DNA of 64,000 nucleotides from Vitrella brassicaformis CCMP3155 (GCA_001179505.1 CDMY01000456.1:248001-312000); one strand, 5' to 3'. Positions 1 to 48,320 are shown, numbered from the stretch's first letter. Notes: generated by a model not told the origin, from the letters alone. Numbers and translations are program-made.

Positions 1-252
1 TCCATCGGTTCGCTCACACAGGTTTCCTTCTCGAGACCGACCTCCTCTGCCCCTCAGTGCACTGCAATGGACGCCGGCGACCTCACTCAGAAGCTGCTCG
101 CTGCCCAGGAGCAGCTCATCACCGCCAAGGATGAGCTCATCAATACACTCAAGCGCGAGCGCGACGAGGCACAGGCCCAACTCGAGGCGCAGAAGCGCGC
201 CAAGACCGCCCTGCAGGTCGAGGTGGATAAGCTGCACCGCACCTCTCATTGA
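1..252 (+). CDS. 3' end of a hypothetical coiled-coil protein (5' part outside window)
   Basis: Frame open from base 1 to TGA at 250-252. MDAGDLTQKLLAAQEQLITAKDELINTLKRERDEAQAQLEAQKR has a heptad-like pattern. Confidence 0.6.
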   Translation, partial: SIGSLTQVSFSRPTSSAPQCTAMDAGDLTQKLLAAQEQLITAKDELINTLKRERDEAQAQLEAQKRAKTALQVEVDKLHRTSH

Positions 253-278
253 TTGATTGATTCCGTCGGCCATCTCAT

Positions 279-1707
279 CTACTCGAACACGACGGTGCCC
301 CATTTGTGGTGGTCGGCGTCCTCCCACTTGCGGACCACCGCATCAAAACACTGAACCAAGGAATCGATCGACACATGCAGGCACGTGCAGGGTGGGGTGC
401 CCTTGCTGTGTTATTTACCGTCCTGCATTCGGATCTCTTGATGCTCCGCAGTATGTCCGCCATGACCCTCCCACACCGCCGCAGCTCACCCTTCGACACA
501 CCACTCACGTCAGACAACGGGGCAGGCTGCACGGCAGATGACACACCAAGAGACATGTAATGGGGGCTGTCCGTCACTTGTATATAGCTATACGTTCCTA
601 CCGACCCAGCTGTCTTTGTCGTGTAGCCATATCTTGCGCGTCATATACACCGCAGCGGCCGCGATGATGTTGGACGGCAGGTGGAGCACACTCACATCGA
701 ACAAAACCAACTCCTGCACACGCACACACACACACACACATTTCTGCATGGGGGGTGTGCCTGTCGGTGTGTGTGTGCATTGAGTGATCCATCGGCTGAC
801 GCATAGGTATTTGGCGAATGCGTGGTATCGCGAGCCGAGTGGCATGTCGGGCAGCGACCCGCACAACTGATGCAGAAACACGGTGGGGGGCCTCCACACG
901 TCCGTCGATACGCCATCGGACCAAAGACTGACACACCACACTCACACACACACAGAGATACACACAAAGAGATGAGATGCATTTAATTGGTGTGGCTGGT
1001 GGAGTGGGTGTGTGGGCTGTTTGCTGACCTCATGAGCACGCCGTTTTGCATGCGGCATATGTCTTCGGCCTGGCAGTTGCTGATACTTACGATGTCGCTC
1101 ACCTCCAGCTGGTCAGGGTAGGTATCCTCAATTTGCGAGGCGACCAACAAACACGCCAAACCGGTCTGCACACACACAAGACACATAACACACACAAAGG
1201 GGCAACACAACCCACCGATGGATGTGTGCATCTCTGTCTGTCGCTTGTGTGAGTGTGGGCCCTATAAGGCAGCGTACGATCGTGTAGTACTCGGGCAGGA
1301 TGTCCATGCCGTCACACCACAGCTTACACAACATGTAGTCGAGCAGCCGCACAGAGAGGTACAACGTCTCATCCGCCAACTGACATCACAATCGCACAGA
1401 CAGGGGAAGCATTACACAGATCTTCTGTGTGAGTGAATTGTGTCCCGTCCATCCATCCATCCATCGGTCCGTTTGAAATCATCCATGGCGTCACTCACTT
1501 GCCCCATCGTGGCCGCATAGATGATTTCGTCCACAACCGAGGCCCGACGGAGGCCGAACCCCCCAGACCGCTGGGCAACATACTCAGCCGGGATGAGCGA
1601 CAACACCTGCAAGCGGGAGAGAAACATAGAACAAGAGAGCTGGCCCGGCCGGCCTCCATCTCAGGCACCTTATGGTCAGAACTCGGCAGATCCACGACCC
1701 TGCTCAT
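279..1707 (-). CDS. Cyclin (A/B-like fold, very short N-terminus), 8 exons
   Basis: Phase-consistent GT-AG chain: MSRVVDLPSSDHK|VLSLIP..RRASVVDEIIYAATMGQ|LADETLYLSVRLLDYML..|TGLACLLVASQIED..|..RPPTVFLHQL..AKYLC|ELVLFD..LPSNIIAAAAVY..|..LRRCGRVM..|CFDAVVRKWE..VFE*. These match cyclin box motifs. Confidence 0.85.
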
Positions 1708-1822
1708 GATGCAATTGCCGCCGTGGCGGTGTGCAAGAGAGGGGAAAACAAATGTTTGTTTCCCGGGACGATGTGTAAATCTGAGTTTTCGTTTACGCAC
1801 CCTCCAGCGGGGGCTGTTCCCG

Positions 1823-2404
1823 ATGTGCGACTGCGTGGCTGTTGGTCTGTTCACCCTGCACGTGGGCTGGTTCTTTCTCACCGGCCTGCAGTGGATGGGC
1901 CCGGGCTGGGGCATCTCGACGCATCACCTTACCGATGTTACCGACAAAGCCCACCAACGCATGGTACATAAGGGACGGAAGGAAGCCATGGACGGACAGG
2001 ATGGATGGATGGATGGATGGATGGATGGATGCACGGACAATGCAAGCGAAAGATATTATGCATTATGAAGTGTGGTGTCTTCCGCCATTAATTTGCTGCA
2101 GAGCGACTCGCCGGTGGTGCACATCCTCATCGGCTCCGTGCTGCTGTCCACCCTCATCACGGCTGGAGCCATCATCGCCACCATGACATTCTGGAGCATC
2201 CACAAGCAAGTCAAGGGCAAGATACCGCCACTGCCTCAGATAGAGAGCACCCGTGCCTACCTCAGAAGCCTCGTCGGCCGAAAGGTGAAGACGGTGAAGG
2301 ACGAGGGGGAGGGGGGAGTCAAGAAGGATGACCACAGCAACGGGGCCGGTGGGGGTGGAGGTGACTGTGGGGAGCCGGCAGCCGACTCGCCGCTCTCTGA
2401 GTGA
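1823..2404 (+). CDS. Small two-TM hypothetical membrane protein, 2 exons (start uncertain)
   Basis: MCDCVAVGLFTLHVGWFFLTGLQW..HQRM joined through a phase-0 intron 1964-2101 to SDSPVVHILIGSVLLSTLITAGAIIATMTFWSIHK.. Confidence 0.5.
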
Positions 2405-2808
2405 CCGACGAGGGGGCACATGATGAGCTCCCAGAGACATCTCTTTGTATCTACGGTGCGGACAGAGCAGCGTGTGGGTTGGCTTTGCATTGGTTGACGT
2501 GTGCACATGCATGGACGGACGGACCACCATCATCAGTGTCGCTCGCTGTTAGTGTGCAGTAAGTAATGAATGTTTCCTCTACTCGGACGATCAATCACTG
2601 GATCCCTCATTAAACGGCACAGAAGCCAAGCCCACTACAGGAAGACAGACACACACACGGACAGACGGCCACTCAGTCCGTCAGCTTCGACACCGTATCC
2701 TGCCATGCAGGACTGCATACATAAGCACGATGATATATCCATGAAGGCAAGGCAGGCTCCATTGATGGACAACACCCATTTATTCCCCACCCCCACCATC
2801 AGTGAGTG

Positions 2809-5800
2809 TCACTTCTTGCTGCCAGCAGGTAGAAAAAGAGGCGGCCGATAGCCAGAGTCGTCACCCTCACTACTCCCTTGATGCGCCTTGCTCGTCCCGT
2901 TGGCGGCATACCCACCACCACCACCCCCAGTGCCCATCCCTAGCCCCCCGTCACCATTGCCGGGCTGCTGTGGATTCGCAGGACCACTACTGTTGGAGAG
3001 GAAGGCCGAGGTGGTCGCCACGGTGCCGTTGTCGCTGCCCTCGGCCAGCGTCGAGGTCTCGACGGTGGCGTCGCCCCCCGCCCCATTGATGGTGTCGTCT
3101 TCCCGCCTCCTGGACGACACTTGCATTCTCCACATCTGAGCGTACTCTCCGCCTGCGGCCAGCAGCTCGTCATGGGTGCCGTGCTCCACCAGCTGACCCT
3201 CGTGCAGCACCATGATCTGACAGACAGACAGACAGACAGACAGGTGAGAGAGAGAGTATGGAGGAGGGCATGGCATTGGGACGGCATGGACAGACAGCTT
3301 TTCGTTCTGCCGATGACCGTGGGTGCCTACCTGGTCAGCGTGTCGGATTGTGCTGAGTCGATGTGCAATGGTGATGCAGGTGCGATTGCGACGAAGTCGC
3401 AACAGGGCCTCCTGCACACACACACAAATACCCATTCATTCACACACTCCTTCAGCACAAGCCGCATCATAGCCAGCTGGTGTGGCTTGGTCGATCTCCT
3501 CACCCACCTGTATCCCCGCCTCCGTCTTCGTATCCAGTGCCGAGGTGGCCTCGTCCAGCAGGACGATGGGGGGGTTCTTGAGAAGGCATCTGGCGATGGC
3601 TACTCGCTGCTTCTCTCCCCCCGACAGCTTGAGTCCTCTCTCGCCCACGGTGGTCTCCCACTTGTCAGGCAGGGACTCGATGAAGCCCCTCAGCTGCGCC
3701 ATCTCGGCCACCCGCTCGCACTCCTCCATTGTGGCGTCCAGCTTACCGTACTTGATGTTGTGCAGCAGGGTGTCGTTGAACATGACCGTGTCCTGAGGCA
3801 CCACACCTACCGCCTGACGCACTGACCTGCATCACATCACATGCGCACGCACACGGCAAACATGGTGAGGTGTGTGGATGTATGGGTTGAGTGCACTGCA
3901 CCGGCAGCTTGCCTTTGCTGCACGGATGAGATGTCGGCCCCGTTGAGGAGGATCTGCCCCTGCTGTGGGTCGTAGAAGCGGAAGAGCAGCCGGCTTATGG
4001 TGGTCTTCCCCGCACCCGTATGCCCCACAATGGCACAGGTCGACCCAGCAGGGACCACAAAAGACACGCCACGCAGACCCCTGAACAAACAAACCGAACA
4101 TTTGAAGAACAGCAGACAGACAAATGCTGCACTCACTGTTCATTGAATGCCTCTTCCCTTTCTCATCTCACCTTTGCGCAGGTTGGTTGGGGTACTTGAA
4201 GTGCACATCCCTGAACTCCACCACGATGCCGCCACACGTCTGGTCACCGGGGTTGCCGGCCGTGACGCCGTTGATCGACCCACTGTCCATCGGCAGGGCT
4301 ATCTCGCCCGTGACGTGGTGCGGCAGGGGCAGCGGGGGGGCCCCAGGCATGTCGACCAAATCAGGCTGCCAAGGCAGGCAGGAAGGATTCCATGGGGAAA
4401 CGCTTATATGGAGAGGGGGCGGCGAGGGAGCCGCCCGTTTCTGTCTCCCTGTGTGGCCACATACCTGTTCTGCGAGCAGCTGTGACAAGTTTCGGATGTC
4501 GATGAAGGCCTTGATAATCACGTTCCACACCTGACAACCATACACACACACACACACACATGGCATGTGATGAGGTGAGGCGGTATTGCGGCGGACGGAC
4601 GGACTGACCGAGCCAAGGAAGTTGAGGGGCACAAAGACGTTGATGATGTAGACGTTGACCGACACGAATGACCCGATCGACATATCTCCTCGCCGGATCT
4701 CCATCCCGCAGATGATCAGCCCCACTGGCCATCACACCAACACACACACAGAAACACAGAAGTCGTCAAATGTCTGACGGCGGCGGGCGGTGGGTTCTTA
4801 CGTATGAGGGTGCTCTGGACGATGACCTGCTGCAGGACATTGAGCAGGTTCAGCGACACCTGGGTCGCCACACCAAACCGCTGACAAACAAGACACAACA
4901 GAACACAACACAGTACACACACCCCCACACAAACGCCTCTCCGTGTGTCGTATTGCCCCCTGTGTGATGTGTCGATGTTCACTCACCTGGTAGTCCCTGA
5001 CGGCCTCGCAGAATCTATCGAGCTCGAAGGGCTCGTTCGTGAAGTACTTGACCGTCTCGAAGTTGATGAGGGAGTCGGTGGCTATGTCGTGGAAACGGTT
5101 GTCCTTCTTGTTGGCCTCCGTCCTAAATTTCCTCCGCCAAAGCGTCACCTTGACCGTCAAGATGCCGTAGATCAGCAACGCACCCGCCAAAAGGGCCGCC
5201 AGCTCCCACCTTTACACACAGGATGGTGGGGGGAAGTGTGTGGTGACGTGTGTGTCGGCGTGTGGATACTTTTGGAAATGCAGAAGGAAGACCACACAGA
5301 CGGCGAAGCACTCGGCGACCGAGGGGATGAGATACAGCACACCCCACGTCATCAAACTGTTGGCCGCGTCGCAGCCACGATCCCTGACACAACACACAAT
5401 ACACACACACACACACAGACAGGCCGTGAGGTGGGTGAATGATACAATGGCCCGTCCGTCCGTCGTCTGTGCTGCCCTTCCCTCCTTGCTTGTATACATG
5501 GAACGTATGACGTTGCCCATGCGTTTCTTGAGGTGCCACTGGAGGGAGAGGTTGTGTAGGTGCTGGAAGGTGTGCTGGGCGATCTCGATGTACGCCGCCT
5601 GCTGCACCTTGATGTAGAGGAGGCTCTGACACTCCTTGAGGGCCTTGCCGCTGAAGGTTAGGAAGCCGAACAGCACCACATACGTGATCAGCCCGCCCAC
5701 CCGGCCATCGGTCAGCGCGTTGACAGCGAAGCCGAGGAAGGCCGGCGCACAGACGTTGCATGTCTTGCTGCCGACGACGCACAGCCAGGTGGACAGACAC

Positions 5801-6602
5801 CGGATGCGGTTCCACATGGTGCTGCCCTTGCCGTCCACGCTACTCCTCGGCCAAAAGTAAGGCCGCAGCACCTTGAGCAGCGACCACACAGACAGCTCGC
5901 TGCTGTACTGCTCCTCCTCAGGCGTGCTCGGCGCCTGCCCATCCTCACTGTTGACCGTCAGCAGAGCGATCCGGTTGGCGCGTGCCTTCTGCTCGTTGCT
6001 CACGACGGCCTCCAGCCACCAAGTCAACAGCCAGTCGGCGAAAGCAAACACCAGGTTGACCAGCACGATCAGCCCCACATGGTGTGTGCCGCTGAACCAT
6101 GGATAAGCGAGCACCTTGACGAGTGCATAGAAGGCCAGGACGCCGAGGAATCGGGCCAGCCAGAGGAGGGGAGTGGTCTTCCACCTCTCCTCGTTGCCTT
6201 TGGTGCCAAGGTAGACCACCGCCACGCTCAGCGACCGGACTAGGGCAACGATGATAATGTCGAAGGCCGACGAGCGGAAGTGGTAGCGCGCGACGTCGTT
6301 ACGACTGGCCTCTAGGAAGGAGAAGCCATAGCAGCCAAGCCACAAAACGAACAGCAGGAGCCAGTCGGCGATAGCAAGGACCGTCCCCAGCCGGTAGAAC
6401 CGTGCTTTCTTCTTCCCCTGTGAGTCACATAGGCATGCACACAGACACCGACAGACAGTGCATGAGTGCGTGGCCGGCCGTCCTCTCCCCCCGACACATG
6501 CTATGCCCTCTTGTGTGTCTATGTGTTTGTTTGCCGCTGACTGACCAGTGTCGCCAGTAGCTCATCCTCCTGGATGGTGCTGAGGTCCGACATGTCAGTC
6601 AT
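2809..6602 (-). CDS. ABCB half-transporter, HMT1/ABCB6/ATM-like, with extra N-terminal TM region
   Basis: Walker A GHTGAGKT, signature [13 protein letters not shown], Walker [20 protein letters not shown], and TMD motifs [12 protein letters not shown] and VFVPLNFLG. All 10+ junctions are phase-consistent, one of them GC-AG. See the upstream extension at 6595-7031. Confidence 0.92.
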
Positions 6603-33127: not shown

Positions 33128-33473
33128 TTGCCGCAACGAACAGACAAGGCAGCTGGTTAAGAAGCTGCAACCAATCAACCAATCACCTCGAACGGCTGGT
33201 GGTATCTGCTGAGCAGGACACTGTGACGGACACAACACATCCGTCTGTCATTCTTCACGCACATATTGGTCTAAGGTGTACCTGTTGAGCAGTTTTAAAG
33301 GCTCGGGGGTTCGGAAGCGGCTTAAGGCTCTCAATCAGTGCGAGCTCAGAAACTCGCGGGCTGGAGGAAAGGGAGAAGGAACAGAGGACAGCGGGGTGCA
33401 ACGACAGCAAGCGCAGAACCCCTACAAGTTTCTTTGCAGAAGCCGCCATCGACTTGGGCGGTCCTTTGAGTCG

Positions 33474-36199
33474 ATGCACGGTCCAGGGCCTCCAAGCTGG
33501 GAAGCCACCTCATCGAGCCTGTTGTCGGCTCCCAGCAGCAGCTCTGCCGCCATGCCGCCGCCCGACGTGCCCATGGCGCCCGTCGCCTCCCCCATATGCA
33601 CATCTGCCCTGCCCAGCCTGGGTCTCTGGGAGGGCGCCGTGGAGGCCGAGCCGACGCAGATCAACACTCAGACCAAACCGCACTTTGTCGAGGTGCACAA
33701 GGACAAGCTCACCGTCAGCTATGTCGGCAAGGGCAACCACACCGACTTCGGGGTGAGTGGAGTGGCACACACAGGCATCGCATTGGGCGCGAGATAGACA
33801 CACGACGTGTTCATGCTTCTCATGGGTTTGATGTGCGTGGGATGCGATTGGTCATGTCAGGCGGTTCAGTCGAACCATCCCGCCCCTAGTCGCCGCGTGG
33901 CGTATTACTTTGAGGTCAAGGTGCTGGACGCCGGCACCCGGGGCAACATCTGTGTGGGACTCAGCGACAAGACCACACTCCTCAACAGACAACCAGGACA
34001 AGATCAAAAGTGACCACACACGCACACGACCAACACACAATAAGTGCATCTCTCTCTCTCTCTCTGTATGTGTGTATGTGTGTGTGTGTGTGTTTGTGTG
34101 TGTGTGCAGTTCCTATGGTTATCAGGGTGAGACCGGCAAGAAGTTCTGCGGCAACGGTCAGAAGGGCGAGGCCTACGGCCCCCCCTACGGCAAGAACGAC
34201 ACCGTCGGCTGCGGCATACACTACACCAAGGGTCACGTTTTCTTCACTCTCAACGGCAAACACCTCGGTCAGTGCCATGCCACACACAGACGAACCACCT
34301 CACCTCCCGGACAGCCAGCCAGCTCATGCATTCTGCGTGCCGTCCTGCCCTGTGTGTTTTGCAGGTCGGGCTAGCGGGCTGGGCCCGTCTGAGTACTACC
34401 CCACTGTTGGTCTGCACAGTCCGGGTGAGAAGGTGCAGTTCAACTTCACCGGGCCCTTCATGTTCGACCTTCAGACACTCATACAAGTGGGCGATACACA
34501 CACGAATGGGTCCGCATTGGCTGGCTGACGGGTTTTTGTGTGTTTCTGTGTGTGTCAGGGTGAGTGTCAGGAGGAGCGCAGGATCATATCGCGCGAGCAG
34601 GTGTCCACCAGAATGCTCCACGACCTTGTCCGGTCATACCTCCTGCACGCCGGCTTCCACAAGACGCTACGCGCATTCGAACGAACCAGCAGTGAGCAGG
34701 GCACCGACACAAGCAGACACAACGCTTAGTTACGAGCCGTGCACTCTTGCACTCTCATCGCAGGTTCAGCCGACACCGACGTGACGATGCAGGACGCCCC
34801 CTCCCCCTCCCCCTTCCCGCCCTCCGGCCCCTCCCTGCTCGCCAACGGCCCCTCCAAGCAGATCGACACTGACACAGGCATGCACGACGACACTCCCAGA
34901 GACAGGCGAAGACAGCCGGATGACGCACACCAGCCATCTGCAGCACCGGCAGCAGCAGCACCGGCGGCGGCAGCCGGCGCAGGCAGCAGCAGCCGTGCGT
35001 GTTCGATTGATGAGGACGAGCAGAGGGCGGTGGGTGTGGGTGACGGTGAGGGTGGCGTTGGCGCCAGGACGCTGTCGGGTCTGGCGGTGGCGGAGCATGC
35101 GCTGAGGAAACTCAGGCAGACAGTCGTCGTCAGGCAAAGTAAGCTGACTGCCTGACGCACGACACCTCATGTGACATAAGGTGAGCTTGGGATGGCTTGT
35201 CTGGTGATTGCTCTTCCAGGCATCCGGCGTGCCATCTGTTCTGGGCGGATACCTGAGGCGATTGAGATCATCAACCAGCACTTCCCCAGGGTCCTCACGG
35301 TAGTCGTCACTGCAGTCACACGAGCACAAGGCTGACTGGCCTCTGTGTTGTTGTGCGCTGTGCTGTGTGGTCAGGAGCAGCCCCCCTCCCTTGCTGTCGT
35401 GCTGGTCGTCTCCCAACAGGTAGCACATCCAGACAAAGCCAGACAATCGCCGCGGTGCCGACTGACTGTCTCTGTCGTCGTGTGGTGTGTGTGTCATCAC
35501 CAGATAGTAGAGTTGATCCAGCGGAATGACGTCAAGGGCGCCCTGAGTTGGCTGCGGCAGGAGTGCAGGGCCGTCAGGGACGGCACCGCACACGCCAAAA
35601 CCGCACTCGAAGTACTGACGGATGGAATGGATAGATCAGAATATTGATGCACTTCCGCACGTGTGTTGCATTCAATGCATGTATGTGTCTGTGTGTGCAG
35701 GAGACGGCGGCGTTGATAGCGTATCGTGACCCCGAGCGGTCCCCCCTGGCGCACCACTTCGACCCATCGAGGCGGCAGCTGGCCGCAGACCTCATCAACC
35801 AACACATCATCGGTGCGGTACACACAGACATTCATGACATGACACACACGCAGAGAGACCAGCGTGATCGAGCCAGCCAGCCAGGTGGAATGTGGAGGGT
35901 CCATCCATCCGTCCGTCCATCCGTGCAGAGCGTGAGTTGGGTCTGAGCGGATGGGCGCCTCTCCACGTGCTTGTGAGACAAGTCGTGGCGGCCAGGTGCA
36001 TAGACGCACATACCAGCACAGTGGCGCTCAGATCCTTCTGGGCCCCTTCTGTGTCTGTGTCGGTGTCTGCAGGCGTCTGCTGTTCGAGCGCAACTTGTCT
36101 CGCGGCCCGTACCCTCATTCCCGCCACCTGTGCCAGGCTCCCCTGTACCAAAACAACCCACCAACTATCCCACCCCAGATGCAGGCAACCGACAACTGA
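33474..36199 (+). CDS. RANBP9: RanBP9/RanBP10 (GID1) SPRY-LisH-CTLH-CRA protein
   Basis: SPRY motifs YYFEVKV, SYGYQGETGKKF, DTVGCGI, FFTLNG, YPTVGLHSPGE; LisH LVRSYLLHAGFHKT; CTLH IRRAICSGRIPEAIE; CRA LIAYRDPERSPL..RRQLAADLINQHI. Confidence 0.9.
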
Positions 36200-36482
36200 G
36201 GGAGGGGGGCGGCGCGGTGTGTTCAGAAGATGAGGCATGTATCCCCGTAGGCTGCATCTATCTTGTTCAGTCAGCTGCATGGATGGCATGTATACATGGA
36301 TGACAGAATGTTGCGCGTGGGTGTCATGCGTGAGTGTATCATAGACAGGTAGGCGACTTATTGATTACTAATTGGAGGCGAGGGACCGTGTGGATGCATT
36401 AATTGCATGGCCATCCTCTCTCTGGAGCTCGCAAAGACGGGCGGCCGGCTGGGGGCATCTCCACATCCTCAAACATTCAACC

Positions 36483-39400
36483 ATGAGTGATGCTTCCAAG
36501 CTCTCGGCAGCCCTTAACGCCACAGTGGCCGTCATGTCCGACGTCGGTGGGTGCACTCGAGAGGCCGCCAGCGACATCATCGGCAGCGACGCCAGTTGGC
36601 AGAGTTCGTCGATTCATTGGTTGGACGAAATGTGGCTGGTGCTATGTGCCCTGCTCGTCCTCATAATGCAGCCCGCATTTGCAATGTACGTATGTAAGGG
36701 GCTCAGAAAGGACGTTTGTGTGTGTTCGGACGTCGATGTGTGTGTGTGTGTTCCACGTGAGGGGCTGGGCGTTTGGGGTGTTGTGATGCTGCTGCTGCTG
36801 CAGGTTTGAGGCAGGCTGTGTGTCCGACAAGAACGGTGCCTCTGCACACACACATGACATACAATACACGTGTGCGTCTCCGTCCGTCTATCTCTTGACC
36901 AACCAGGTGCCTCCATCATGATAAAGAATGCAGTGGACATACTCGTCTGCTCGTTCGCCTACGCACTTGTCGGTAAGTGCCGGAGAGGAGAAGGGAGAGA
37001 TGAGGCGGGCGGCCTTGATTGTGCGCGGGGCGGGTGGGTATGTTCAGGTTTTCAGCTGTCCTACGCAACGGCCGACCCCTTTGTACCTCCGGATGACATG
37101 GCCAGATTCTTCTTCAATCTGGCATTCGCCAGCACCGGTATGTATGAAGACACACAAAGCGGGGTGTGCGCAGATGACTGTCTGTTTCTCCATCACCGTT
37201 TGTGACAGCCGCCACGATCCTGAGTGGTGCGTTGGCGGAGAGGCTTCGTTTGAACGCCTACATCATTCTTACTCTTGCTGTCGGCAGCGTCATCTACCCC
37301 ATCGTGACGGTACGTATGTGGCAGTCACTTCCGATTCATTTCCGCCATGCGTGTGGTGTGGTGTCTCAGTGGTGGGTGTGGGCCGATGACGGTGAGCAAT
37401 CGGACGGACAAGAGGGCACATTAGCCTGGCATGTATGAATGCATTGGTGCGTGGCTGCACTGGCTGGCTGCAGGTCTCCTGCAGAAACAAGGGTACATAG
37501 ACTTCGCTGGCGGCAGTGTGGTGCACGTCTTGGGGGGCGTTGGCGCCCTCACTGCCGCAGCGATGCTCGGCCCACGTGTGGGGCGATACCCGGAGTACTC
37601 TCCGTGGGACATGCCCGTGCTGCGTCGACTGCTCGGTCGAAGCCTGGACCCCGACCAATACATGCTTCCGCCGGGATTGCCGGCCATTGAAGACGCACCA
37701 CACCCCTTCCGCATCGTCTCAGGCACCCTCTTTCTATGGTCTGTCTGTTATATCTTGGATACTGATAACGCCTGGACATTGTGTTTGTGTTTGTGTGTTA
37801 CGTACAGGGGTGCGCGGTACGGATTCAATTGTGGCTCGACCATGGGTGTGACTGCCGGCGGTGCCTACGTGGCTGCCCGTGTGGCGGTGATCACAACGAT
37901 GGGTGCCGTGGGCGGCGGGCTGGCCATCGTTGCCATCAGCATGATGTCCAGGCGATGGGTGCCTCTGCGTCTCTGCACGGGCATACTCGCGGGGCTCGTG
38001 TCCATCACGGCTGGTTAGTCTGAGAGACATGAAGCGGAGCTCTTGATCGTGTTTATCGTGTGTCGGTAGGTGCGCCTCACCTCGGAATGTACGAGGCAAT
38101 GGCTGTGGGTGCTCTTGGGGCGTTGTTGGCCCGGCTGTCGACGGCAATCCTCAAGTGGTGCCAGATCGACGATGTCGTCGGTGCCTTCGGCACGCACGGC
38201 GTGCCCGGTGCGTGGGGTGTGTTGGCCGTGGCGCTGTTCGCCAAGAGTGCCAGCTGCGGAGACTATACCACGGTTGGGCTTTTCTATGCCGCCACCAAGG
38301 AGCAAGTCAACGAGGTCACAGACAGACAGACAGACAGAGAGAGACCGCGGACCTGGATGGATGCCCTCCTGTGTGTGTGTGTGATTTCGATGTCTAGGCT
38401 TTTGTGCAGGTCGGTGTGCAGCTTGGCGGCCTCCTGCTGATCATTGCCTTCACGTCTGCATCAGTCGCCATCGTCTGCTTTGTACGTTACGTGATCATAC
38501 AGACACGAACGTCACATAGCGGATCGCATGTCCATCTCTGTTGTGTGCAGGTGCTGAATCAGACGCCGATGAAGCTGCGTGTGTCGTTCGGAGAGGAACT
38601 GACGGGCCTGGACTGGATGGAGCAGTCCATAAAGAACATGCATCAGGCCAGAATGGAGGTCGTCGAGTCCCTCGTGCACTCCGTCGCGGGACTTAACGCA
38701 GGTGTTATTGAGCATGACACCATCAATTGTTATCTTATAACTAGCATTTGTCTGTGTGTCCGGGCGGTCAGAATGGGACCTATCGTGAGAAAGATAGCTG
38801 CGCTGATGTGTCTCATGCATTGATATACATCCCATCTGGTGCTTGCCAATGTCAGGTGGTTGTCGGCTGAAGCGAAGCGCTTGAAGCTCCACAAGTCGAC
38901 TTCACGAACAATGGAGGTGCGTGCAGACAGCCTGATAAGAATCCTTTGCCTGTCGCTTCTTGCCATCGATCAGACGACTTTGAATCACTTCGTCAAGGCC
39001 AGCCGAGCCCTCAGAGATGCTTCGGCGCAGAGACGGTCCAGCACGGGCTCAGAGGTGGATGTTGAGCTGCCTGTCTTCATGCCCCTGGGCACTCTGGTGG
39101 TGCTCGTGCATCGCGCGGAGATGAAGAAAGGCGTAAGAGGCAGCTGGGGAGACACCACTGCAGTGAAACACGAAGCCACACGTCCCTCTCTCTGCACGTG
39201 TGTCTGCTACTTACTGCAGGTGAGCACACCGGATGACCGAACCTTCTTTGTCGAAGTCAAGCTTGTCCGGTCAGCACTGTGTAGTCAGCCGCACCTCTGA
39301 CATATGTGTGTGTCATGTCATGCGTGCCACTAGTGGCGACCCCGACAGCGCCGATGGCACAGCCAAACTGCAGCCCCACCCCGGATTCCGCAGAGCACGA

Positions 39401-40829
39401 GACACAGCCATCGTGGACGAAGCTGCGACCCAATCCGCATACGTGTGGGAAGAGGTGGGCCAGGACCCATTAATGGATCATGACAGCCTTCTGGTCTGTG
39501 ACAGTTTGTCTGTCTGTCTGTCTGTCTAGCCGTTGGTGTTTGCGAATGTGGGCAATGAGGTGGTCAACGATTTACTCATACAGGTGGGCCGCTATCGACA
39601 CACGCCACATATACGTGTGTGTGTGTGTGTGTGTGTGTGATAACTTGACTAGTTCAATGTGTACGATGCCCGCTCGCTTCGGGACATGCGCGGCGACTGC
39701 TTCGGTTCGTCACTAGCGACCAAGGCACTCGCCAATGACGTCAGCGCCGCCGCCGCGGGGTTCAAGAAGAAACACTCGATAATGACAGGCAGCGTACGGA
39801 TGGGCATACCCGATGCACGCCCTTGCGGACGGACAATGCACCCTTCAGGCGTTTTACCCAGCCTGCCCGTCCTCTTGGGAGCAGGACCTGGCCGGAGACG
39901 ACTTCCAAAAGGACATGATGGAAGGGGTCAGCACAGCACCGTGAGACACCAACAGACACTCTCATCGTGTACTCATGGAAGGAAGTATGGATACATACGT
40001 CTTTGTGTTGTCAGGGCGTCAAGACCAAAGAGCTGTGTCGGGCCATCAGGCTGGAGGCGCGACGGAGTAGCCTCGCCAGGCGAATGTGCGTAAGGACGGT
40101 GCACCGCACTGCACTCACAGAAACCTGCACAGACCTGTTCGCCCACCCAGGTCATTTATGCGCAAGGACGACGAGAAGAAAATCATTATTACCGGCAAGC
40201 TGTACTTCTCCATCGAGTTCAGGACGAGCGATTTTGACAAGGTCGGTCACACGGACACTCACCGTGTGTCGCTCACAACGTCCCGTTATCCTGTGCATCC
40301 ACCCCTCCATCCGTCCGTGCAGTCTCTGTCGAAAGCTATATCATCGCTGGTGGCGGTCGACAAGCAGCTGGAGGCCAGAAAGCGCAATTCGATACCAAGT
40401 CAGCCAACAAGAGTTCATCTATGTGTGTATGTGTGTGGCATGGACCACCTACGCAGCTTCTGAGCTCGACCTGCCCATAAGTCCGACTGCGGGCAAGGGC
40501 TCTCTGTCCACCTTCAGCCGACGCACACACAACTTGATAAAAAAGGGAATCGCCAGGATTGGTGAGAGCAAGACACAACGCCTCAGCTGTCTCACCTCAC
40601 GTCGTGTGTGCGTGTGTGTGCAGCCAAGTCGATGGCTCGTTCGCCCAAAAGCGGCGATGCGCTCCAGCCAGGTCTGGATATGTTCGCTCACCGGCGGAGG
40701 GCCTCCGTCGGCCGCTGCTCCGTCATGAGCAACGACGAGCGGGTCTCACTCGAGGTCGACGCACCGCCCCTCCAAGCCGCACCGTCTGCAGCACACCTCC
40801 TCGCCGCGCCCAAAATCATCAGCTCTTAA
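36483..40829 (+). CDS. AMT: Ammonium transporter (Amt) with long C-terminal extension containing a C2-like domain
   Basis: FEAG..KN..IMIKN, FNLAFAST..ILSGALAER, DFAGGSVVH, YGFNCGS, DDVVGAFGTHGVPG, LRVSFGEELTGLD, followed by a phase-consistent exon chain to TAA at 40827-40829. Confidence 0.93.
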
Positions 40830-41022
40830 AGGGGGCAAGTCGGTCTCATCGGCCTTGCCCACACCAGTCGGGGCATCCACCGCATTCCTCAACGATGCCG
40901 TTGTGGACGAGACGTCGGGAGCCAAGACTCCCGTCACCAATCGGATAACAAGATACCGCACCAAAGGCAGCACACCAAGCCCCGGTAGCAGATGCCGTGC
41001 GGCGGTGGAAGGCGATGGGAAG

Positions 41023-43104
41023 ATGGAGACGAAGCGGGCCAAGAAGGAGCTGGCTGACAAGAAGAATGACAGCCTCGCGGTCATTTCGGATGTGCTGCGC
41101 GATGACGCTGAGTTTGCACTGCCCAGCCGCATACAGAGGCACGCGGAGCGCATCAAGAACAAAAAGGCCACAGGTGAGTCGACTCGTCGATGGCCGGAGG
41201 GAGTGAGACACGCGAGTGAGCGGCGTGTGTTGCGTGTGCATGGATGGCCCAGGCTCCATGGAGCTGTCCGATGAGCAGAGACACATGCTGGAGAGCGAGG
41301 CGGCGGCCATGGAGCAGGAGGAGATGGCCAGCATACGAATTGCTGCACTTGAAGGACAGACTCTCAACACATCCAAGTACCCCCACACCTTCATCCCTTA
41401 CGCATACATCTACACCTGGCTGTGTATGTGATGTGTGTGGCCGCAGAACCTCGCCTCAGAGAGACAGCAGCGGCGTCAAGTTCAAGAGCAACGCCACAGA
41501 CATGGACGAAGCCGAGGACGGCGAATGGAGAGGTACACCTGTATCCTGACCTGTAACAACTCCCCAATGACCTACCTGTCCTGTGTGTACTGACTGGGGA
41601 TGCACAAATGCTTCAAAGACGAAACCCGTCAGGCGCAGCGCAAAGCGAAGCTGCTGAACCGCAAGGTTACTGGTCAGCTGATGACAGCCGCCCAGAAGGA
41701 GGAGCTCAACAGGGCAACACAAGAAGACATGGAAGATGGCGACGAGGCTGAGGATGACGAGTACGACAAAGATCACCCCAATCTTGTGTCATTCAAGTCG
41801 CGGGAGACTGATATCGACAGCGACGCCGATGACTGGAAAGGTGCACCCAGCACAATCCTCACCGTGCATTTGGACGTGTGTTTGTGTGCAGATGAGTCCC
41901 GCCACGCCAAGCGAAAACTCAAACTGATGGGCAGGAAAGCTACAGGACAAATCCGGATGTCGCAAACACAGAAGAACGAGCTGCGCCGTGCATCAGAGGA
42001 GGCTATGGACGACGGCGACTCAGATGTTGGCAGCAATGACGCCGATGGCCATGATGACCAGCCACCAAGAGGCGCGAACTTGGTTCAGTTCCAGTCCCTT
42101 CAGACAGATATCGACAGCGACGCCGACTGGCAAGGTGCCTGAGACATGTCTGCTACACACACACACATGTACACTGCTCGTCCTTTCCTCGACTACAGAT
42201 GCATCCCAGCATGCTCAGCGTAGCGCAAAGCTGATTGCGAGAAAAGCTACTGGGCAGCTACAAATGACGGAGTTGCAGAGGAGGGAGCTGGAAGATGACG
42301 ACGAGGAGGAGGAAAGGGGAGAGTTGCAAGACGACCAGCCTTACCTTGTCTCCTTCAAGACACAAGAAACAGACATCGACAGCAACCCCGACTGGCTGGG
42401 TACAGTACGGCCCACATGCGCATCGTGTGTCCCTGTGTTCACACGTGTCTCCCTACCTGTGTCTCTCAGCAACAGGTCGGTTAAGGCGCGCAGGGCGAAG
42501 CTGAAGGCCCGGCAGACGACGGGCCAGGTTAAGCTCACGAGTAGCCAGAAGGACGCTCTCAGTAGTCTGGCACAGAAAAATGACGACGATGACGATACTG
42601 GTAGCGAAGACGCCTCTCCGCAGCAGGACGGAGGGGGCGACGCAGACGCCGTCCATTTAGTGACCTTCCGTAGCAGACCGCAGAGCGTAGTCAGCGACAT
42701 GGACGATCAAGAGTGGAAAAGTAGGCAGGCAATGCAGAAGATCGACCACCCTTCGCCGCAGCACACGTGTGTGTCTGCATGTCTCCGCTGCTCAGCAAGC
42801 GGTCGGGCAGAGGCGCGCAGGGCGAAGCTGAAGGAGCGCAAGGCGACAGGACAGTTGAAGCTCACCTCAGACCAGAAAGATGCCCTCGCCCATGCCGCGT
42901 CCGAAGAGCTGGAGGAAGAGGATACACCCGAGAGGAACGTCTCTGGTGCAGAAGATCGGCACATCGGAGGGGACGGGTGGCGGGGTGAATTTCGCCCACC
43001 TGAATGGCCAAGGCGCTGACGACCAGGACGGTTTCTATGCCGGGTCACAAATCGTCTTTGACTTCGCTCGGTGGGGTGAGGTTTCCTCTGTGGGACACAT
43101 TTGA
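41023..43104 (+). CDS. Novel tandem-repeat protein (six ~70-aa repeats, roughly one per exon); may be continuous with the Amt gene
   Basis: Repeated R-x-AKL-xx-RKATGQ-LxLT-xxQKxxL / acidic linker / LVxFxS-xx-TDIDSD-x-DW. Repeats are separated by phase-1 introns. The end is 43019 or 43104 depending on a +1 shift near 42970. Confidence 0.75.
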
Positions 43105-43375
43105 CATCGCCCACTCTCTATGCATCACACACACATACAGTGAATGCCCATACACGACACTCATCGAAAGACAAACACATCACGCACATGCCATCATTGT
43201 TTGGCGACACCTTTAATTAAAGGGGTCGAAATTTGAAAGTCGTCCTTGATGGCTGCATTTTGGTCAGAAGGGTCCCCACCACTACCCCAAAGCCTACCTG
43301 AGGCAGGTCCCCACCGTAGCCTACGACTGTCCATCTGTACCTACGACTGCGTGTCCGTCTACGAGCAGCCAAGCT

Positions 43376-44513
43376 TTATACGGACGGGGCCTGCTTCCAC
43401 AACTCATCTACCCACTCCGCCCACGCAGGATTCGCCGCACGATACTTTTCGACCTCGGCCACCTTGTCGCCTTCCTTCACCCCCGGCGGCAGCGGGATCA
43501 TCTGGATCATCTGGATCAGCCGGCCCTGCCAGGTCTCAGCCCACATGCTGTCGGCCGGTGGCGCCAGTTTTGCCGTGGGCTCCTTTTCTTTCTCCTCGTA
43601 CTGCTTGAGCAATTCTGTTGTGATGGGCGTCAGCAGCACCTTCAGGTCGCCTCCCTCCAAAGCTGCCCGCAGATTTGCAAAGGTGACTGGCTTGCCGCTG
43701 TTGTCTTGCTCCTCCTCCACCTCATCGTCAGCCGCTGAGCCGCCCTTCTTTCCTTTGCCCTTGCCGCCCTTCTTGCTCTTGCCGCCCTTCTTGCCCTTGC
43801 CGCCCTTCTTGCCCTTGCCCTTGCCGATGGTCTTTTTGCCGATGGTCTTCTTGACCCTCTGCTTGGGCGGTGGGAGGATGGTCTGGGTCGGGTCATACTT
43901 GTCTGTGGTCTTCTTGACGTTGAATAGCTCTCGATGGCCCTCAGCGGCGACAAGTGCCGGCGGCTGTCAGACGCATCCACACACACACTGTGATACACCA
44001 CACACAGGAAGCTAGTTGCTTCCTACCCACCTTGAGTTCGATTTCCTCGTCGATCGACCACACGATGTAGCCTGAATCCGTAATGGCCTCACTGAATCCA
44101 TTCGGGCTGAACACAGCACACACAGAGGAAGATCTCTCGATTTCCGTCTTTCTGTCTGTCTGTCTGCCAGTCTGCCTGTCCAAACCATCCATCCAGCCAT
44201 CCGTCTGTCCGTCTGTCTGTCTGTCTGTCTTGCCACGCCGATTCATTCTGCTCCAAAGATCTTATCTGATCACGATGAATCCTTCGGGCGGCACAGCGAT
44301 CCTACAGGAGTACAGTGGGTCCGTTCTGTCCTCGATACTCGAGAATAGAGAGATGGTGCGACCCTTGACCACAAAATATCCCGTCTTGAAAGTCGGGTTC
44401 ATCAGCTGTTCGGCGGTTCGGGAGAAATCAGCGTCCACGTCGATGTAAGTGACCTCCCACTTTCGAAACTCGGCTGTAACGCAGCCCAACAGGGAAGCGA
44501 TAAGCAACATCAT
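43376..44513 (-). CDS. Secreted hypothetical protein with Lys/Gly-rich linker, 3 exons
   Basis: Signal-like MMLLIASLLGCVTAE; middle exon PNGFSEAITDSGYIVWSIDEEIELK; last exon PPALVAAE..KTIGKGKGKKGGKGKKGG..WVDELWKQAPSV*. Confidence 0.65.
43740..43850 (-). repeat. Coding low-complexity repeat KGKKGG / KTIG
   Basis: Repeated ttgccgcccttc units on the + strand. Confidence 0.9.
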
Positions 44514-47058: not shown

Positions 47059-47929
47059 TTTGGCTGATTGTATGCATCGGCCTTGTTGTGTGTGTTTGTT
47101 TGTTTGTCTGTGTCTATTCCGTTCTCAGAAATTGGAATCGGGGGATCAAGACACAGGTGGAGAAGGGAAGAAGAAGAAGGTTCTGGACAGCACACATGTG
47201 GAAGCGGCCCGCATTCTCGTTGAGGAGCTGAACCGGGTTGCGGTCGGTTTCGGCTCGACGGGACTTCAGCCGCCAAGAGCCACCTGCCGCCATTGGGTAT
47301 TGCTGTCGCGCTTCGTGATCAACAAAGACGGCACAACCCCCCTCACTCTGCTGGCCAGCCACCTACTTCATCACTCATCCGTCTTGTCGGGCGTGCACGA
47401 CATTGCCGACCTTCACGCCCACTTAGCCAGCCACCTACACTGGCGTGTGAGTGCCCATGCCGTCGTGCACGAGCGCCTGGAGTCCAGCTACGGGCCGGCT
47501 CTCCCGATCTTCAATCCCCAGCTGAAGACGCACGAGACAGAAGAGGTCATGGAGAATCTCTACGAGCCGTGGGGGGAACTCCTACTTGCCGCCACAGGGG
47601 TGGAGCAGTCCATCAAACCCCACCATACGCGTGGCTACTGTGTGAGAGCGTCAGGGAAGGACACACACGGCAACCGCCTCGTCACTCTGCCAATGACCCC
47701 CCTCTACGGCGCATCCCCTCTGTACCGGCTCTATGTCCTCGACATCACCAACACGCAGATTTGGCTGGCAGCGCGCATCGCGGGGAAGGCGTGGCAGCGG
47801 CGCAAGAAAGAGCACTTCAAGACCTTCGCAAAGGGGTGGCGGCGCATCGAGGGAGTGTCGAAGCTGTGTGTAGTGCTGAGAGAGCGATGTGTCTGGATCA
47901 GGTCATACTTTAGGCGAGCAGGGCCTTAG
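46409..47929 (+). CDS. Hypothetical protein (~450 aa), one in-frame stop-free intron at 46964-47128
   Basis: The 506-codon ORF contains a 165-nt GT-AG segment made of (CA)n(GA)n..(GT)n repeats. No family recognised. Confidence 0.75.
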
Positions 47930-48320
47930 ACATCATCCGTGTGTACGTACGTGGGGCACAACGTGTGCGTGTCTTTGATAGAGCAGTGAGCCAGACACCT
48001 CTGCTCCTCATAGAAGCCCGCGCCTTTGTACTTGCGCTTGAAGTATATCAGGTGGTCCTGCGCGAGGCTGAGGACGGCTATAAGAGACGCCCCGACAGCT
48101 ACAGCCACTGATTGCAATGAATCACAGACACTCATGCAGAGGGTGAGAGTCAAAGCGCATGTCGATGTGCACCTGTCCATGCATGTACGTGTGTTTGTGC
48201 TTGTGTGCGTACCTGCTGCATCGGCCAGAAAAAAGAATCGGAAGCCAACTGGGCGCCACGTCCTGACTGACGGGCAGAAGAAGATGCTGCTCAAGGAAGA
48301 GAGGGAAGAGTAGAGTGGCC
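47926..48320 (-). CDS. Possible small single-TM protein (start and end unresolved)
   Basis: ..WRPVGFRFFFLADAA joined in phase 1 to VAVAVGASLIAVLSLAQDHLIYFKRKYKGAGFYEEQ. No clear ATG. Confidence 0.35.

What the first reader, a model, noticed from the sequence alone, without database searches (positions are those of the whole stretch)
41023..43104. Undescribed exon-encoded repeat with RKATG (H3 tail-like) and VxF motifs
Seen, six units: NKKATG/NRKVTGQ/GRKATGQ/ARKATGQ/ARQTTGQ/ERKATGQ, then a helix ending QKxxL, an acidic linker, and GVKFKS/LVSFKS/LVQFQS/LVSFKT/LVTFRS/(GVNFAH) followed by TDIDSD..W. Phase-1 introns at the repeat borders indicate exon duplication. Known: histone H3 has ARKSTG at K9, and PP1 docks on RVxF. 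Inference: a multivalent basic/acidic scaffold with possible methyl-lysine mimic and phosphatase or kinase docking sites, which would be the regulatory tail of the Amt if fused. The VxF motifs lack the upstream basic residue, so PP1 binding is uncertain.
Basis: partly seen in the sequence, partly recalled or inferred. Interest (0 to 1): 0.75.

Follow-up and report, generated by a model that had tools for sequence, protein, structure and literature searches.

The report
Tandem PP1-inhibitor-like modules beside ammonium transporter
This stretch of the alga Vitrella encodes a disordered protein built from repeats of a short undescribed module whose layout recalls animal phosphatase-1 inhibitors, and a sister gene carries the same repeats as the tail of an ammonium transporter; here only four of the six repeats are still in frame.

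Summary
The repeat is real, but only four of the six units are in frame. RNA contigs and the public annotation (P0001, 353 aa) give a gene from ATG 41023 to a stop at 42502-42504 that holds units 1-4. Intron 42400-42469 throws units 5-6 out of frame. The sixth 'GVNFAH' motif is a reading in the wrong frame.

No Pfam, PDB or fold match was found. A profile of the units, searched against 1.84 billion proteins, found only five other proteins:
- a Vitrella paralogue in which the same repeats form the C-terminal tail of an Amt-C2 ammonium transporter;
- the 81-aa ORF annotated over unit 6 of this locus;
- proteins of Chromera, Rhytidocystis and one unnamed sample.

Across 30 modules the conserved unit is [VI]xF, an acidic spacer, an aromatic residue, a basic helix, R-[RK]-x-T-[GP] and a short helix. 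This is the grammar of inhibitor-1/DARPP-32: an RVxF dock plus a basic phospho-threonine site. I did not show homology to that family.

The H3-tail mimic idea is not supported. The PP1 and kinase idea is plausible but untested. At this locus the repeats are not fused to the Amt, because the stop is kept in the RNA.

First readers of this scan noted similar modules on two other pieces of this genome (s1-201778, s1-205652).

The parts
41023..41173 (+). Exon 1a of the repeat gene (P0001). It begins at ATG 41023 and holds the first basic motif, NKKATG.
   Evidence: P0001 sequence, gene range in L001, RNA contig block 40623-41174.
41253..41376 (+). Exon 1b, the helical and acidic insert of unit 1.
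   Evidence: P0001; L002 block 41246-41376.
41447..41532 (+). Exon 1c, with GVKFKS, an acidic run and the W that ends unit 1.
   Evidence: P0001; joint 41530>41617.
41619..41840 (+). Exon 2, which is unit 2 (NRKVTGQ ... LVSFKS ... DDWK). It is bounded by phase-1 GT..AG introns.
   Evidence: Joints 41530>41617 and 41838>41890 in X6 and X7; translation.
41892..42134 (+). Exon 3, which is unit 3 (GRKATGQ ... LVQFQS ... DWQ).
   Evidence: Joints.
42199..42399 (+). Exon 4, which is unit 4 (ARKATGQ ... LVSFKT ... DWL). It is the last in-frame unit.
   Evidence: Joints 42132>42197 and 42398>42469.
42400..42469 (+). A 70-nt intron whose removal shifts the frame of the next exon relative to units 1-4.
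   Evidence: Joint seen in X1, X6 and X7 contigs; frame analysis.
42470..42504 (+). End of the P0001 ORF. It reads the non-homologous tail ATGRLRRAGRS and then TGA at 42502-42504. About 42476-42481, unit 5 is one base shorter than unit 6.
   Evidence: P0001 C-terminus; L001 gene end; sequence comparison of exon 5 and exon 6 starts.
42477..42720 (+). Unit 5 (ARQTTGQ ... LVTFRS ... EWK). It is open and well conserved, but lies in the -1 frame relative to the P0001 ORF in the mRNA.
42796..43019 (+). Unit 6 (ERKATGQ ... NVSG ... GWRG, then EFRPPEWPRR and a stop). It is in the same frame as unit 5. The old donor G|GTGAAT at about 42985 is not spliced. The annotation has a separate 81-aa ORF here (P0004, 42699-43019).
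   Evidence: Contigs run unbroken over 42796-43397 (X6) and 42796-43150 (X7).
42982..42999 (+). 'GVNFAH', a reading in another frame that overlaps the W-R-G-E-F codons of unit 6. It is not part of the repeat.
   Evidence: Frame mod3=1 against mod3=0 for unit 6; only 3.3 bits to the module profile.
40729..41022 (+). 98 open codons upstream of ATG 41023 in the repeat frame. They overlap the end of the Amt-C2 ORF, whose stop is at 40827-40829 in another frame.
   Evidence: Stop map; translations; RNA contig unbroken over 40623-41174 with no gap.

Best explanation
The region is a transcribed gene of Vitrella brassicaformis for a 353-aa, largely disordered protein. It has four in-frame copies of a roughly 75-aa module, followed in the same mRNA by two further copies that a one-base loss has put out of frame.

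The module belongs to a small, undescribed family found so far in Vitrella, Chromera, the apicomplexan Rhytidocystis and one unnamed sample. In a Vitrella paralogue the same module array is the C-terminal tail of an ammonium transporter with a C2-like domain.

Read in its conserved phase, one module is [VI]-x-F, an acidic spacer of variable length, an aromatic residue, a basic helix (R-x3-R-x2-[RK]-[LI]), R-[RK]-x-T-[GP], and a short helix (L-[TS]-x2-Q-x3-L).

Inferred, not shown: each module is a phosphorylation-switched docking or inhibitor site for the PP1 catalytic subunit, in the manner of inhibitor-1/DARPP-32.
- The VxF anchors in the RVxF pocket.
- The basic helix lies along the acidic groove.
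- The threonine, once phosphorylated by a basophilic kinase (PKA, PKG or CDPK type, which need R at -3), reaches the active site.
- In tandem, the array would tie local PP1 activity to kinase signalling next to the transporter.

At this locus the array is a stand-alone product, or a broken-off tail, rather than a fused Amt tail.
For: Shown:
- Gene model and expression. Spliced contigs in X6, X7 and X1 match P0001.
- Purifying selection between units. dN/dS is 0.18-0.35 where it could be computed, with synonymous sites near saturation.
- Family. A profile search of 1.84e9 proteins gave only P0001, P0002 (5e-37), P0003 (8e-20), P0004 (1.6e-15, the unit 6 ORF of this locus), P0005 (2e-6) and P0006 (3.5e-4).
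- P0002 has PF00909 plus the repeat tail.
- Conserved columns over 30 modules: V 80%, F 87%, aromatic 87%, R 90% and 93%, [LIV] 100%, R(-3) 100%, T/S 100%, and G (70%) or P (27%) at +1.
- An AF2 model of one module has pLDDT 81.5. The VxF part is non-helical, then come a helix (residues 19-35), a loop with the T, and a helix (46-54).
- The ESM Atlas model of the whole protein has pLDDT 0.43, which points to disorder.

From the literature: inhibitor-1 needs R8KIQF12 plus the I29-R30-R33...T35 subdomain, and T35 is phosphorylated by PKA (PMC5758809). A MYPT1 R-R-S-pT-Q-G peptide inhibits PP1 (abstract of PMC10003451).
Against: - There is no sequence-profile match to Pfam DARPP-32 or to any PP1-regulator family, even at E<=10. 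There is no PDB sequence hit and no fold hit.
- The basic residue of RVxF is present in only 10 of 30 modules (loose definition) and in none of the window's own modules.
- The F-to-T spacing is 31-41 residues, against 22 in inhibitor-1.
- My module set for the Chromera protein favoured sites that have a VxF upstream, which inflates the VxF share.
- No binding, phosphorylation or translation data exist.
- Two frame disruptions at this locus are compatible with decay.
Confidence: 0.4

Rival explanations
1. The array is a phospho-regulated disordered region that does not involve PP1. The R-[RK]-x-T sites would be substrates, pseudosubstrates or 14-3-3-type sites for basophilic kinases. The VxF, aromatic residue and helix would bind some other partner, such as the transporter's own cytosolic face, the C2 domain or calmodulin.
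For: R at -3 and T are invariant, which fits many basophilic kinase sites. The basic residue before VxF is mostly absent. There is no profile match to any PP1 regulator. In the paralogue the array sits next to the Amt-C2 body.
Against: V and F are conserved at a fixed distance upstream of a basic phospho-site. This pairing is what defines inhibitor-1-type PP1 inhibitors, and a plain kinase substrate does not need it.
Confidence: 0.25
2. At this locus the array is a decaying remnant of an ancestral Amt-C2-repeat gene. A frame change near the Amt stop cut the tail off, a second one cut off units 5-6, and the 353-aa ORF is merely carried on read-through transcripts and does little or nothing.
For: The paralogue has the fused form. 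There are two frame disruptions, both present in RNA. The repeat frame is open for 98 codons upstream of its ATG. The RNA contig L002 runs through three genes, so transcription alone says little. The window's modules lack the basic RVxF residue.
Against: A 353-aa ORF remains intact with its own ATG 193 nt after the Amt stop. That is the same spacing as between the clearly separate SPRY-CTLH and Amt genes on the same contig. The motif columns are intact in units 1-4. The dN/dS values reflect past selection only, not present selection.
Confidence: 0.2
3. The whole region is still translated as one Amt-C2-repeat protein through recoding or rare splice forms. That would need a +1 shift at the Amt stop, and a frame-restoring event at the unit 4/5 junction such as a 69-nt splice or a retained intron.
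For: In the mRNA the Amt-C2 frame and the unit 5-6 frame are the same, and only units 1-4 are offset. Intron 42400-42469 has no in-frame stop, so retaining it would read units 4-6 through (ORF 41988..43019). The paralogue is fused.
Against: The contigs show only the 70-nt splice and keep the stop codon. There is no in-frame slippery heptamer in the overlap. The homologous frame of unit 5 starts nine codons before the ORF1 stop, so the shift is mutational in position. Frames would agree by chance about one time in three.
Confidence: 0.07
4. The module is a histone H3 tail mimic or chromatin scaffold. ARKATG would copy ARKS(T) at H3K9 and be read or methylated by chromatin enzymes.
For: One unit reads ARKATGQ. 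A weak, sub-threshold SPT2 match covers residues 3-85 (17.4 bits against a cut-off of 24).
Against: The A is not conserved. The K position is R in 13 and K in 10 of 30 modules. In the paralogue the array is the C-terminal tail of a membrane transporter. The SPT2 hit is below the cut-off and lies in charged helices.
Confidence: 0.03

Closest known systems
Inhibitor-1 / DARPP-32 (PPP1R1 family, Pfam PF05395)
   Same: Both are disordered. Both have a hydrophobic V/I-x-F dock followed downstream by [IL]-basic-R-R-x-T and then P or G. Relatives read IRARRPTP and RIKARRPTG. Inhibitor-1 has R8KIQF12 and I29-R30-31-32-33..T35, with T35 phosphorylated by PKA (PMC5758809).
   Different: There is no detectable profile match. 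The spacing is 31-41 residues rather than 22. The modules have an extra conserved aromatic residue, a basic helix and a second helix. They occur in tandem arrays of 4 to about 20, not as a single copy. The basic residue before VxF is often missing. The family occurs in chrompodellids and an apicomplexan, and one copy is attached to a transporter.
MYPT1 inhibitory phospho-sites (R-R-S-pT-Q/G-G)
   Same: Both have a basic R-R-x-T-G/Q site whose phospho-form inhibits PP1 (abstract of PMC10003451). In both cases the protein also carries an RVxF dock. That last point for MYPT1 is from my own knowledge of its KVKF motif and was not tested here.
   Different: MYPT1 is an ankyrin-repeat targeting subunit with single sites far from its dock. 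There is no homology.
PPP1R15 / GADD34 PP1-binding core (Pfam PF10488)
   Same: From memory only: KVRF, then W, then a D-R-x-R-F-x-R-R-I helix. This resembles the Rhytidocystis modules, which read VRF...F.DPDR..QRF.RI.
   Different: Not tested against a real PPP1R15 sequence. There is no Pfam hit. PPP1R15 has no R-R-x-T-G site.
Phospho-regulated C-terminal tail of plant AMT1 ammonium transporters
   Same: In both, a C-terminal tail of an Amt-family transporter carries a threonine in a regulatory context. For plants this is my own knowledge (AMT1;1 T460). For the paralogue.
   Different: The plant tail is a short conserved segment that acts allosterically within the trimer. Here the tail is a long repeat array behind a C2-like domain, and at this locus it is a separate ORF.

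Membership tests
Inhibitor-1/DARPP-32 (PF05395) | Significant sequence or profile similarity to the family | tested here: not met
   hmmscan of units, P0001, the P0002 tail, P0003, P0005 and P0006 at E<=10 gave no PF05395 hit.
Inhibitor-1/DARPP-32 (PF05395) | RVxF-type PP1 docking motif N-terminal to the phospho-site | tested here: inconclusive
   [VI]x[FW] is present in 24 of 30 modules. The loose RVxF definition fits 10 of 30 and the strict one 6 of 30. None of the window's own modules has the basic residue.
Inhibitor-1/DARPP-32 (PF05395) | Basic run ending in R-R-x-T downstream of the dock (a PKA-type site) | tested here: met
   R(-3) is present in 30 of 30, R/K(-2) in 23 of 30, T in 27 of 30 and S in 3, and [LIV] at -6 in 30 of 30. 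The spacing is 31-41 residues, against 22 in inhibitor-1.
Inhibitor-1/DARPP-32 (PF05395) | Phospho-Thr-dependent inhibition of PP1 | not testable with these tools
   This needs biochemistry or a complex prediction. Structure prediction folds single chains only.
Histone H3 tail mimic (ARKS/T) | Conserved A-R-K-S/T with an invariant lysine as the methyl acceptor | tested here: not met
   The column is R in 13 and K in 10 of 30 modules, and the A is not conserved. In the paralogue the array is on the C-terminal tail of a membrane transporter.
Any curated Pfam repeat or domain | A hit at the gathering threshold | tested here: not met
   The best hit is SPT2 at 17.4 bits against a cut-off of 24.
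C-terminal tail of the adjacent Amt-C2 transporter (in-frame fusion) | One ORF running from the Amt through the repeats in the mRNA | tested here: not met
   The RNA contig keeps TAA at 40827-40829 with no indel. The repeat ORF is in another frame. The feature is met in the paralogue P0002, as annotated.
Programmed -1 ribosomal frameshift joining units 4 and 5 | An in-frame X XXY YYZ slippery site in the overlap | tested here: not met
   The only heptamer, AAAGGGG, is in the wrong phase.

The most novel reading that the evidence does not exclude
Chrompodellids and at least one apicomplexan have a family of tandem inhibitor-1/DARPP-32-like modules, each an RVxF dock plus a kinase-switched basic phospho-threonine. 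These would act as multivalent, phosphorylation-gated PP1 sinks. In Vitrella one such array is wired to an Amt-C2 ammonium transporter, so that nitrogen uptake and PP1 signalling are coupled at the membrane. If so, this logic arose outside animals or is far older than thought.
Probability: 0.3. Interest if true: 0.75.

Novelty: new variant of a known kind. Interest (0 to 1): 0.55.

Why it matters
Inhibitor-1/DARPP-32-type control of PP1 is, to my knowledge, treated as an animal speciality. A 2022 review of apicomplexan phosphatases describes the PP1 partners LRR1 and inhibitor-2 and never mentions DARPP-32 (PMC8949495).

A conserved module with the same two-part grammar, repeated 4 to about 20 times per protein in relatives of malaria parasites, would be new in two ways. 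It would be a new class of PP1 regulator candidates, and a rare case of a nutrient transporter that carries its own phosphatase-docking array. It can be tested directly with peptides and recombinant PP1.

For this particular locus the value is lower. The copy is truncated, lacks the basic docking residue and may be decaying.

Tried and rejected
- Pfam on every exon, P0001 and all relatives at E<=10 gave nothing above the cut-offs. The SPT2, EBNA-3 and other weak hits are charged low-complexity matches.
- PDB sequence searches with the unit profile A2 and the module profile A3 gave only chance hits or none.
- Foldseek of the AF2 module model against the PDB gave no match.
- The ESM Atlas gave no usable feature hit. 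Its structural rows all had TM scores of at most 0.33.
- Three word-index protein searches (window read-through, P0002 tail, P0006) returned only the query itself. Low-complexity words saturated the candidate lists, so these blanks say little.
- A -1 frameshift signal between units 4 and 5 was looked for and none was found.
- I listed possible introns that could join the Amt frame to the repeat frame. There were 343 GT/GC..AG combinations and none is supported by contigs, so the exercise was uninformative.
- The bacterial-type promoter and terminator scan of the spacer is not applicable to this organism.
- tblastn of the paralogue's linker against 40300-41022 gave no significant alignment, so I could not place the frame change from homology.
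- 'GVNFAH' as a sixth VxF is rejected. It is in the wrong frame and scores 3.3 bits.

For spliced sequence I used the database protein P0001 and the RNA contig L002 by reference.

Full report
**Organism and gene model**

The window is from Vitrella brassicaformis. Six-frame translation and alignment confirm tandem units of about 62-81 aa on the + strand between 41023 and 43019.

The public annotation has a 353-aa product here (P0001; gene 41023-42504 by the L001 coordinates). Contigs of public runs laid on 38500-44000 show clean GT..AG joints:
- 41530>41617
- 41838>41890
- 42132>42197
- 42398>42469, seen in X1, X6 and X7
- 42720>42796

These contigs are therefore cDNA-derived. They reproduce P0001 exactly. 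The 6898-nt contig is also held as L002 (ERR558152_25193), on which bases 5019-6080 translate to P0001.

Unit 1 has two extra introns (41174-41252 and 41377-41446).

- Removing the 70-nt intron 42400-42469 leaves exon 5 one base out of register. The ORF reads ATGRLRRAGRS and stops at 42502-42504.
- Compared with the homologous start of exon 6, exon 5 is one base shorter just after the acceptor, at about 42476-42481.
- Units 5 and 6 remain open and in frame with each other across the 75-nt intron. They sit in the -1 frame of the mRNA and have no AUG before 42699. The annotation calls an 81-aa ORF there (P0004).
- There is no in-phase slippery heptamer in the overlap.
- After unit 6 the old donor (W-R-G|GTGAAT) is not used. 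X6 and X7 contigs run unbroken to 43397 and 43150.
- 'GVNFAH' is the same DNA as W-R-G-E-F read in another frame, so it is not a sixth VxF. In its own frame, unit 6 has NVSG at that position.

**Is the repeat real?**

Yes. The unit HMM scores 68-102 bits per unit within the window. Between units, synonymous sites are near saturation (pS 0.65-0.83) while pN is 0.26-0.47. Where it could be computed, dN/dS is 0.18-0.35. The duplications are therefore old, and the peptide sequence has been held by selection for most of that time, including in units 5 and 6.

**Relation to the Amt**

- The Amt-C2 ORF ends at TAA 40827-40829.
- The RNA contig is unbroken over 40623-41174 with no mismatch or gap, so the stop is real.
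- The repeat ORF starts 193 nt later, in the +1 frame.
- L002 also carries the upstream SPRY-CTLH gene, separated from the Amt by 190 nt. Lying on one contig is therefore no evidence of one protein.
- At this locus the repeats are not an Amt tail.

**Relatives**

Pfam, PDB, the ESM Atlas and the word-index search left the protein open. I therefore searched a profile of the six units against 1.84 billion representative proteins. Six proteins passed E<=0.001:

| Protein | Length | E-value | Source |
|---|---|---|---|
| P0001 | 353 aa | 1.8e-105 | the query locus |
| P0004 | 81 aa | 1.6e-15 | the unit 6 ORF of this locus |
| P0002 | 1399 aa | 5e-37 | Vitrella CEM02269.1, on another contig |
| P0003 | 1155 aa | 8e-20 | transcriptome GHVS01, which is Rhytidocystis sp. 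ex Travisia forbesii, an agamococcidian apicomplexan |
| P0005 | 454 aa | 2e-6 | Logan contig of SRR26360272, next to an IMCp-like ORF |
| P0006 | 2239 aa | 3.5e-4 | Chromera velia Cvel_20316 |

P0002 is the key result. It is an Amt (PF00909, 1e-59), followed by the same C2-like region as the window's gene, followed by six or more of these modules as its C-terminal tail. The two Vitrella loci are paralogues with the same order of parts. In one of them the array is annotated as fused. This is a Rosetta-stone argument that the array works with the transporter.

**The module in its conserved phase**

The relatives show that the conserved block runs across the exon border. Thirty modules aligned from VxF onward (A3) give the following column shares:

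| Position | Share of 30 modules |
|---|---|
| V/I/L | 80% |
| F (aromatic class) | 87% |
| second aromatic (F/W) | 87% |
| R | 90% |
| R | 93% |
| R/K | 90% |
| L/I/V | 100% |
| R at -3 | 100% |
| R/K at -2 | 77% |
| T/S | 100% |
| G | 70% |
| P | 27% |
| L, four residues after the G/P | 83% |
| T/S next | 67% |
| L, seven residues later | 80% |

- The spacer between VxF and the aromatic residue is acidic and varies in length.
- The F-to-T distance is 31-41 residues.
- AF2 on one module with this alignment gives pLDDT 81.5. The VxF part is non-helical. A helix runs from the aromatic residue through the basic run, the T sits in a loop, and a second helix follows.
- The whole protein is predicted to be disordered (ESM Atlas pLDDT 0.43).

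This is the look of an array of short linear motifs in a disordered chain.

**Mechanism (inferred)**

Inhibitor-1 needs two elements. One is the R8KIQF12 dock. The other is the subdomain around T35 (I29, R30-R33), which PKA phosphorylates (PMC5758809). The modules have both elements in the same order. In the relatives they are close to the animal wording: RIRARRPTP, AIRARPPTP and RIKARRPTG. A phospho R-R-S-T-Q-G peptide of MYPT1 also inhibits PP1 (PMC10003451 abstract).

I therefore rank a phosphorylation-switched PP1 docking or inhibitor module first, at about 0.4.

The weaknesses are plain:
- No profile match to PF05395 or any PP1 regulator.
- The basic residue of RVxF is present in only 10 of 30 modules and in none of the window's own.
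- The spacing is longer than in inhibitor-1.
- My choice of Chromera modules favoured sites with a VxF upstream.
- There are no experiments.

My recollections of the DARPP-32 and GADD34 sequences are leads only and were not tested.

**The H3-mimic idea**

This fails. The lysine column is R as often as K, the alanine is not conserved, and in the paralogue the array sits on the C-terminal tail of a membrane transporter.

**Status of this locus**

Three readings remain open:
- A stand-alone tail protein produced by gene fission. The ORF is intact, has its own ATG, and shows the same 190-nt spacing as other neighbouring genes here.
- A decaying remnant. There are two frame disruptions and weak docking motifs.
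- Much less likely, recoding or rare splice forms.

Two facts are unexplained and are noted rather than interpreted. The repeat frame is open for 98 codons upstream of ATG 41023. In the mRNA, the Amt frame and the unit 5-6 frame coincide while units 1-4 are offset.

**Earlier notes of this scan**

After I had reached the inhibitor-1 reading (note), a word look-up showed two first-reader notes on other pieces of this genome with the same idea: s1-201778 and s1-205652. I did not see their DNA, and they are not independent evidence. Notes s1-221702 (Amt-C2) and s1-221856 (+1 shift at the Amt stop) concern the neighbouring gene. My data add that the stop is present in RNA and that a fused paralogue exists.

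Spliced sequence was used only by reference (P0001, L002).

Noticed in passing
window 48227-48310 (+): An exon-like ORF piece, KKNRKPTGRHVLTDGQKKMLLKEEREE, sits behind a CAG acceptor and ahead of a GT. It resembles the basic-site-plus-helix half of the module (E 0.0013 with A2 and 0.012 with A3 in a six-frame search of the window). It lies between the annotated gene ending near 47929 and the minus-strand gene starting near 48704.
   Followed up: partly
window 33378-43397 (L002, 6898 nt): One assembled RNA contig carries three complete same-strand ORFs: SPRY-CTLH, Amt-C2 and the repeat protein. The spacers are only about 190 nt. Either the UTRs overlap or transcription is polycistronic-like in Vitrella.
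   Followed up: partly
window 40729-41022 and L002 frames: The repeat frame is open for 98 codons upstream of its ATG and overlaps the Amt C-terminus. In the mRNA, the Amt-C2 ORF and units 5-6 share one frame while units 1-4 are in the +1 frame.
   Followed up: partly
window 43314-43792 (- strand gene): Contigs of X1 and X7 cover the neighbouring minus-strand gene with 11-16 base differences over about 220-480 nt, while X5 and X6 match the window. This points to a second allele, strain or close paralogue in those samples.
   Followed up: no
window 40296-40316 and 42155-42172: The same loose-end sequences appear at these two places in all four runs. One 566-nt contig touches both places by about 20 bases, so a short sequence is shared with another locus.
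   Followed up: no
L004 (SRR26360272_70046) 2-3363: The repeat-family protein P0005 lies between a carbonic-anhydrase-like ORF (PF00194, 7e-7) and an ORF with a weak IMCp hit on one 3.5-kb contig. The source organism is not identified, but it looks alveolate.
   Followed up: partly
L003 6490-7779 (paralogue P0002): In the paralogue the introns fall at the R-K|A-T-G site rather than at the W-x-G border. A 196-aa double module is duplicated almost exactly (residues 987-1182 against 1183-1378). The two arrays therefore expanded independently.
   Followed up: partly
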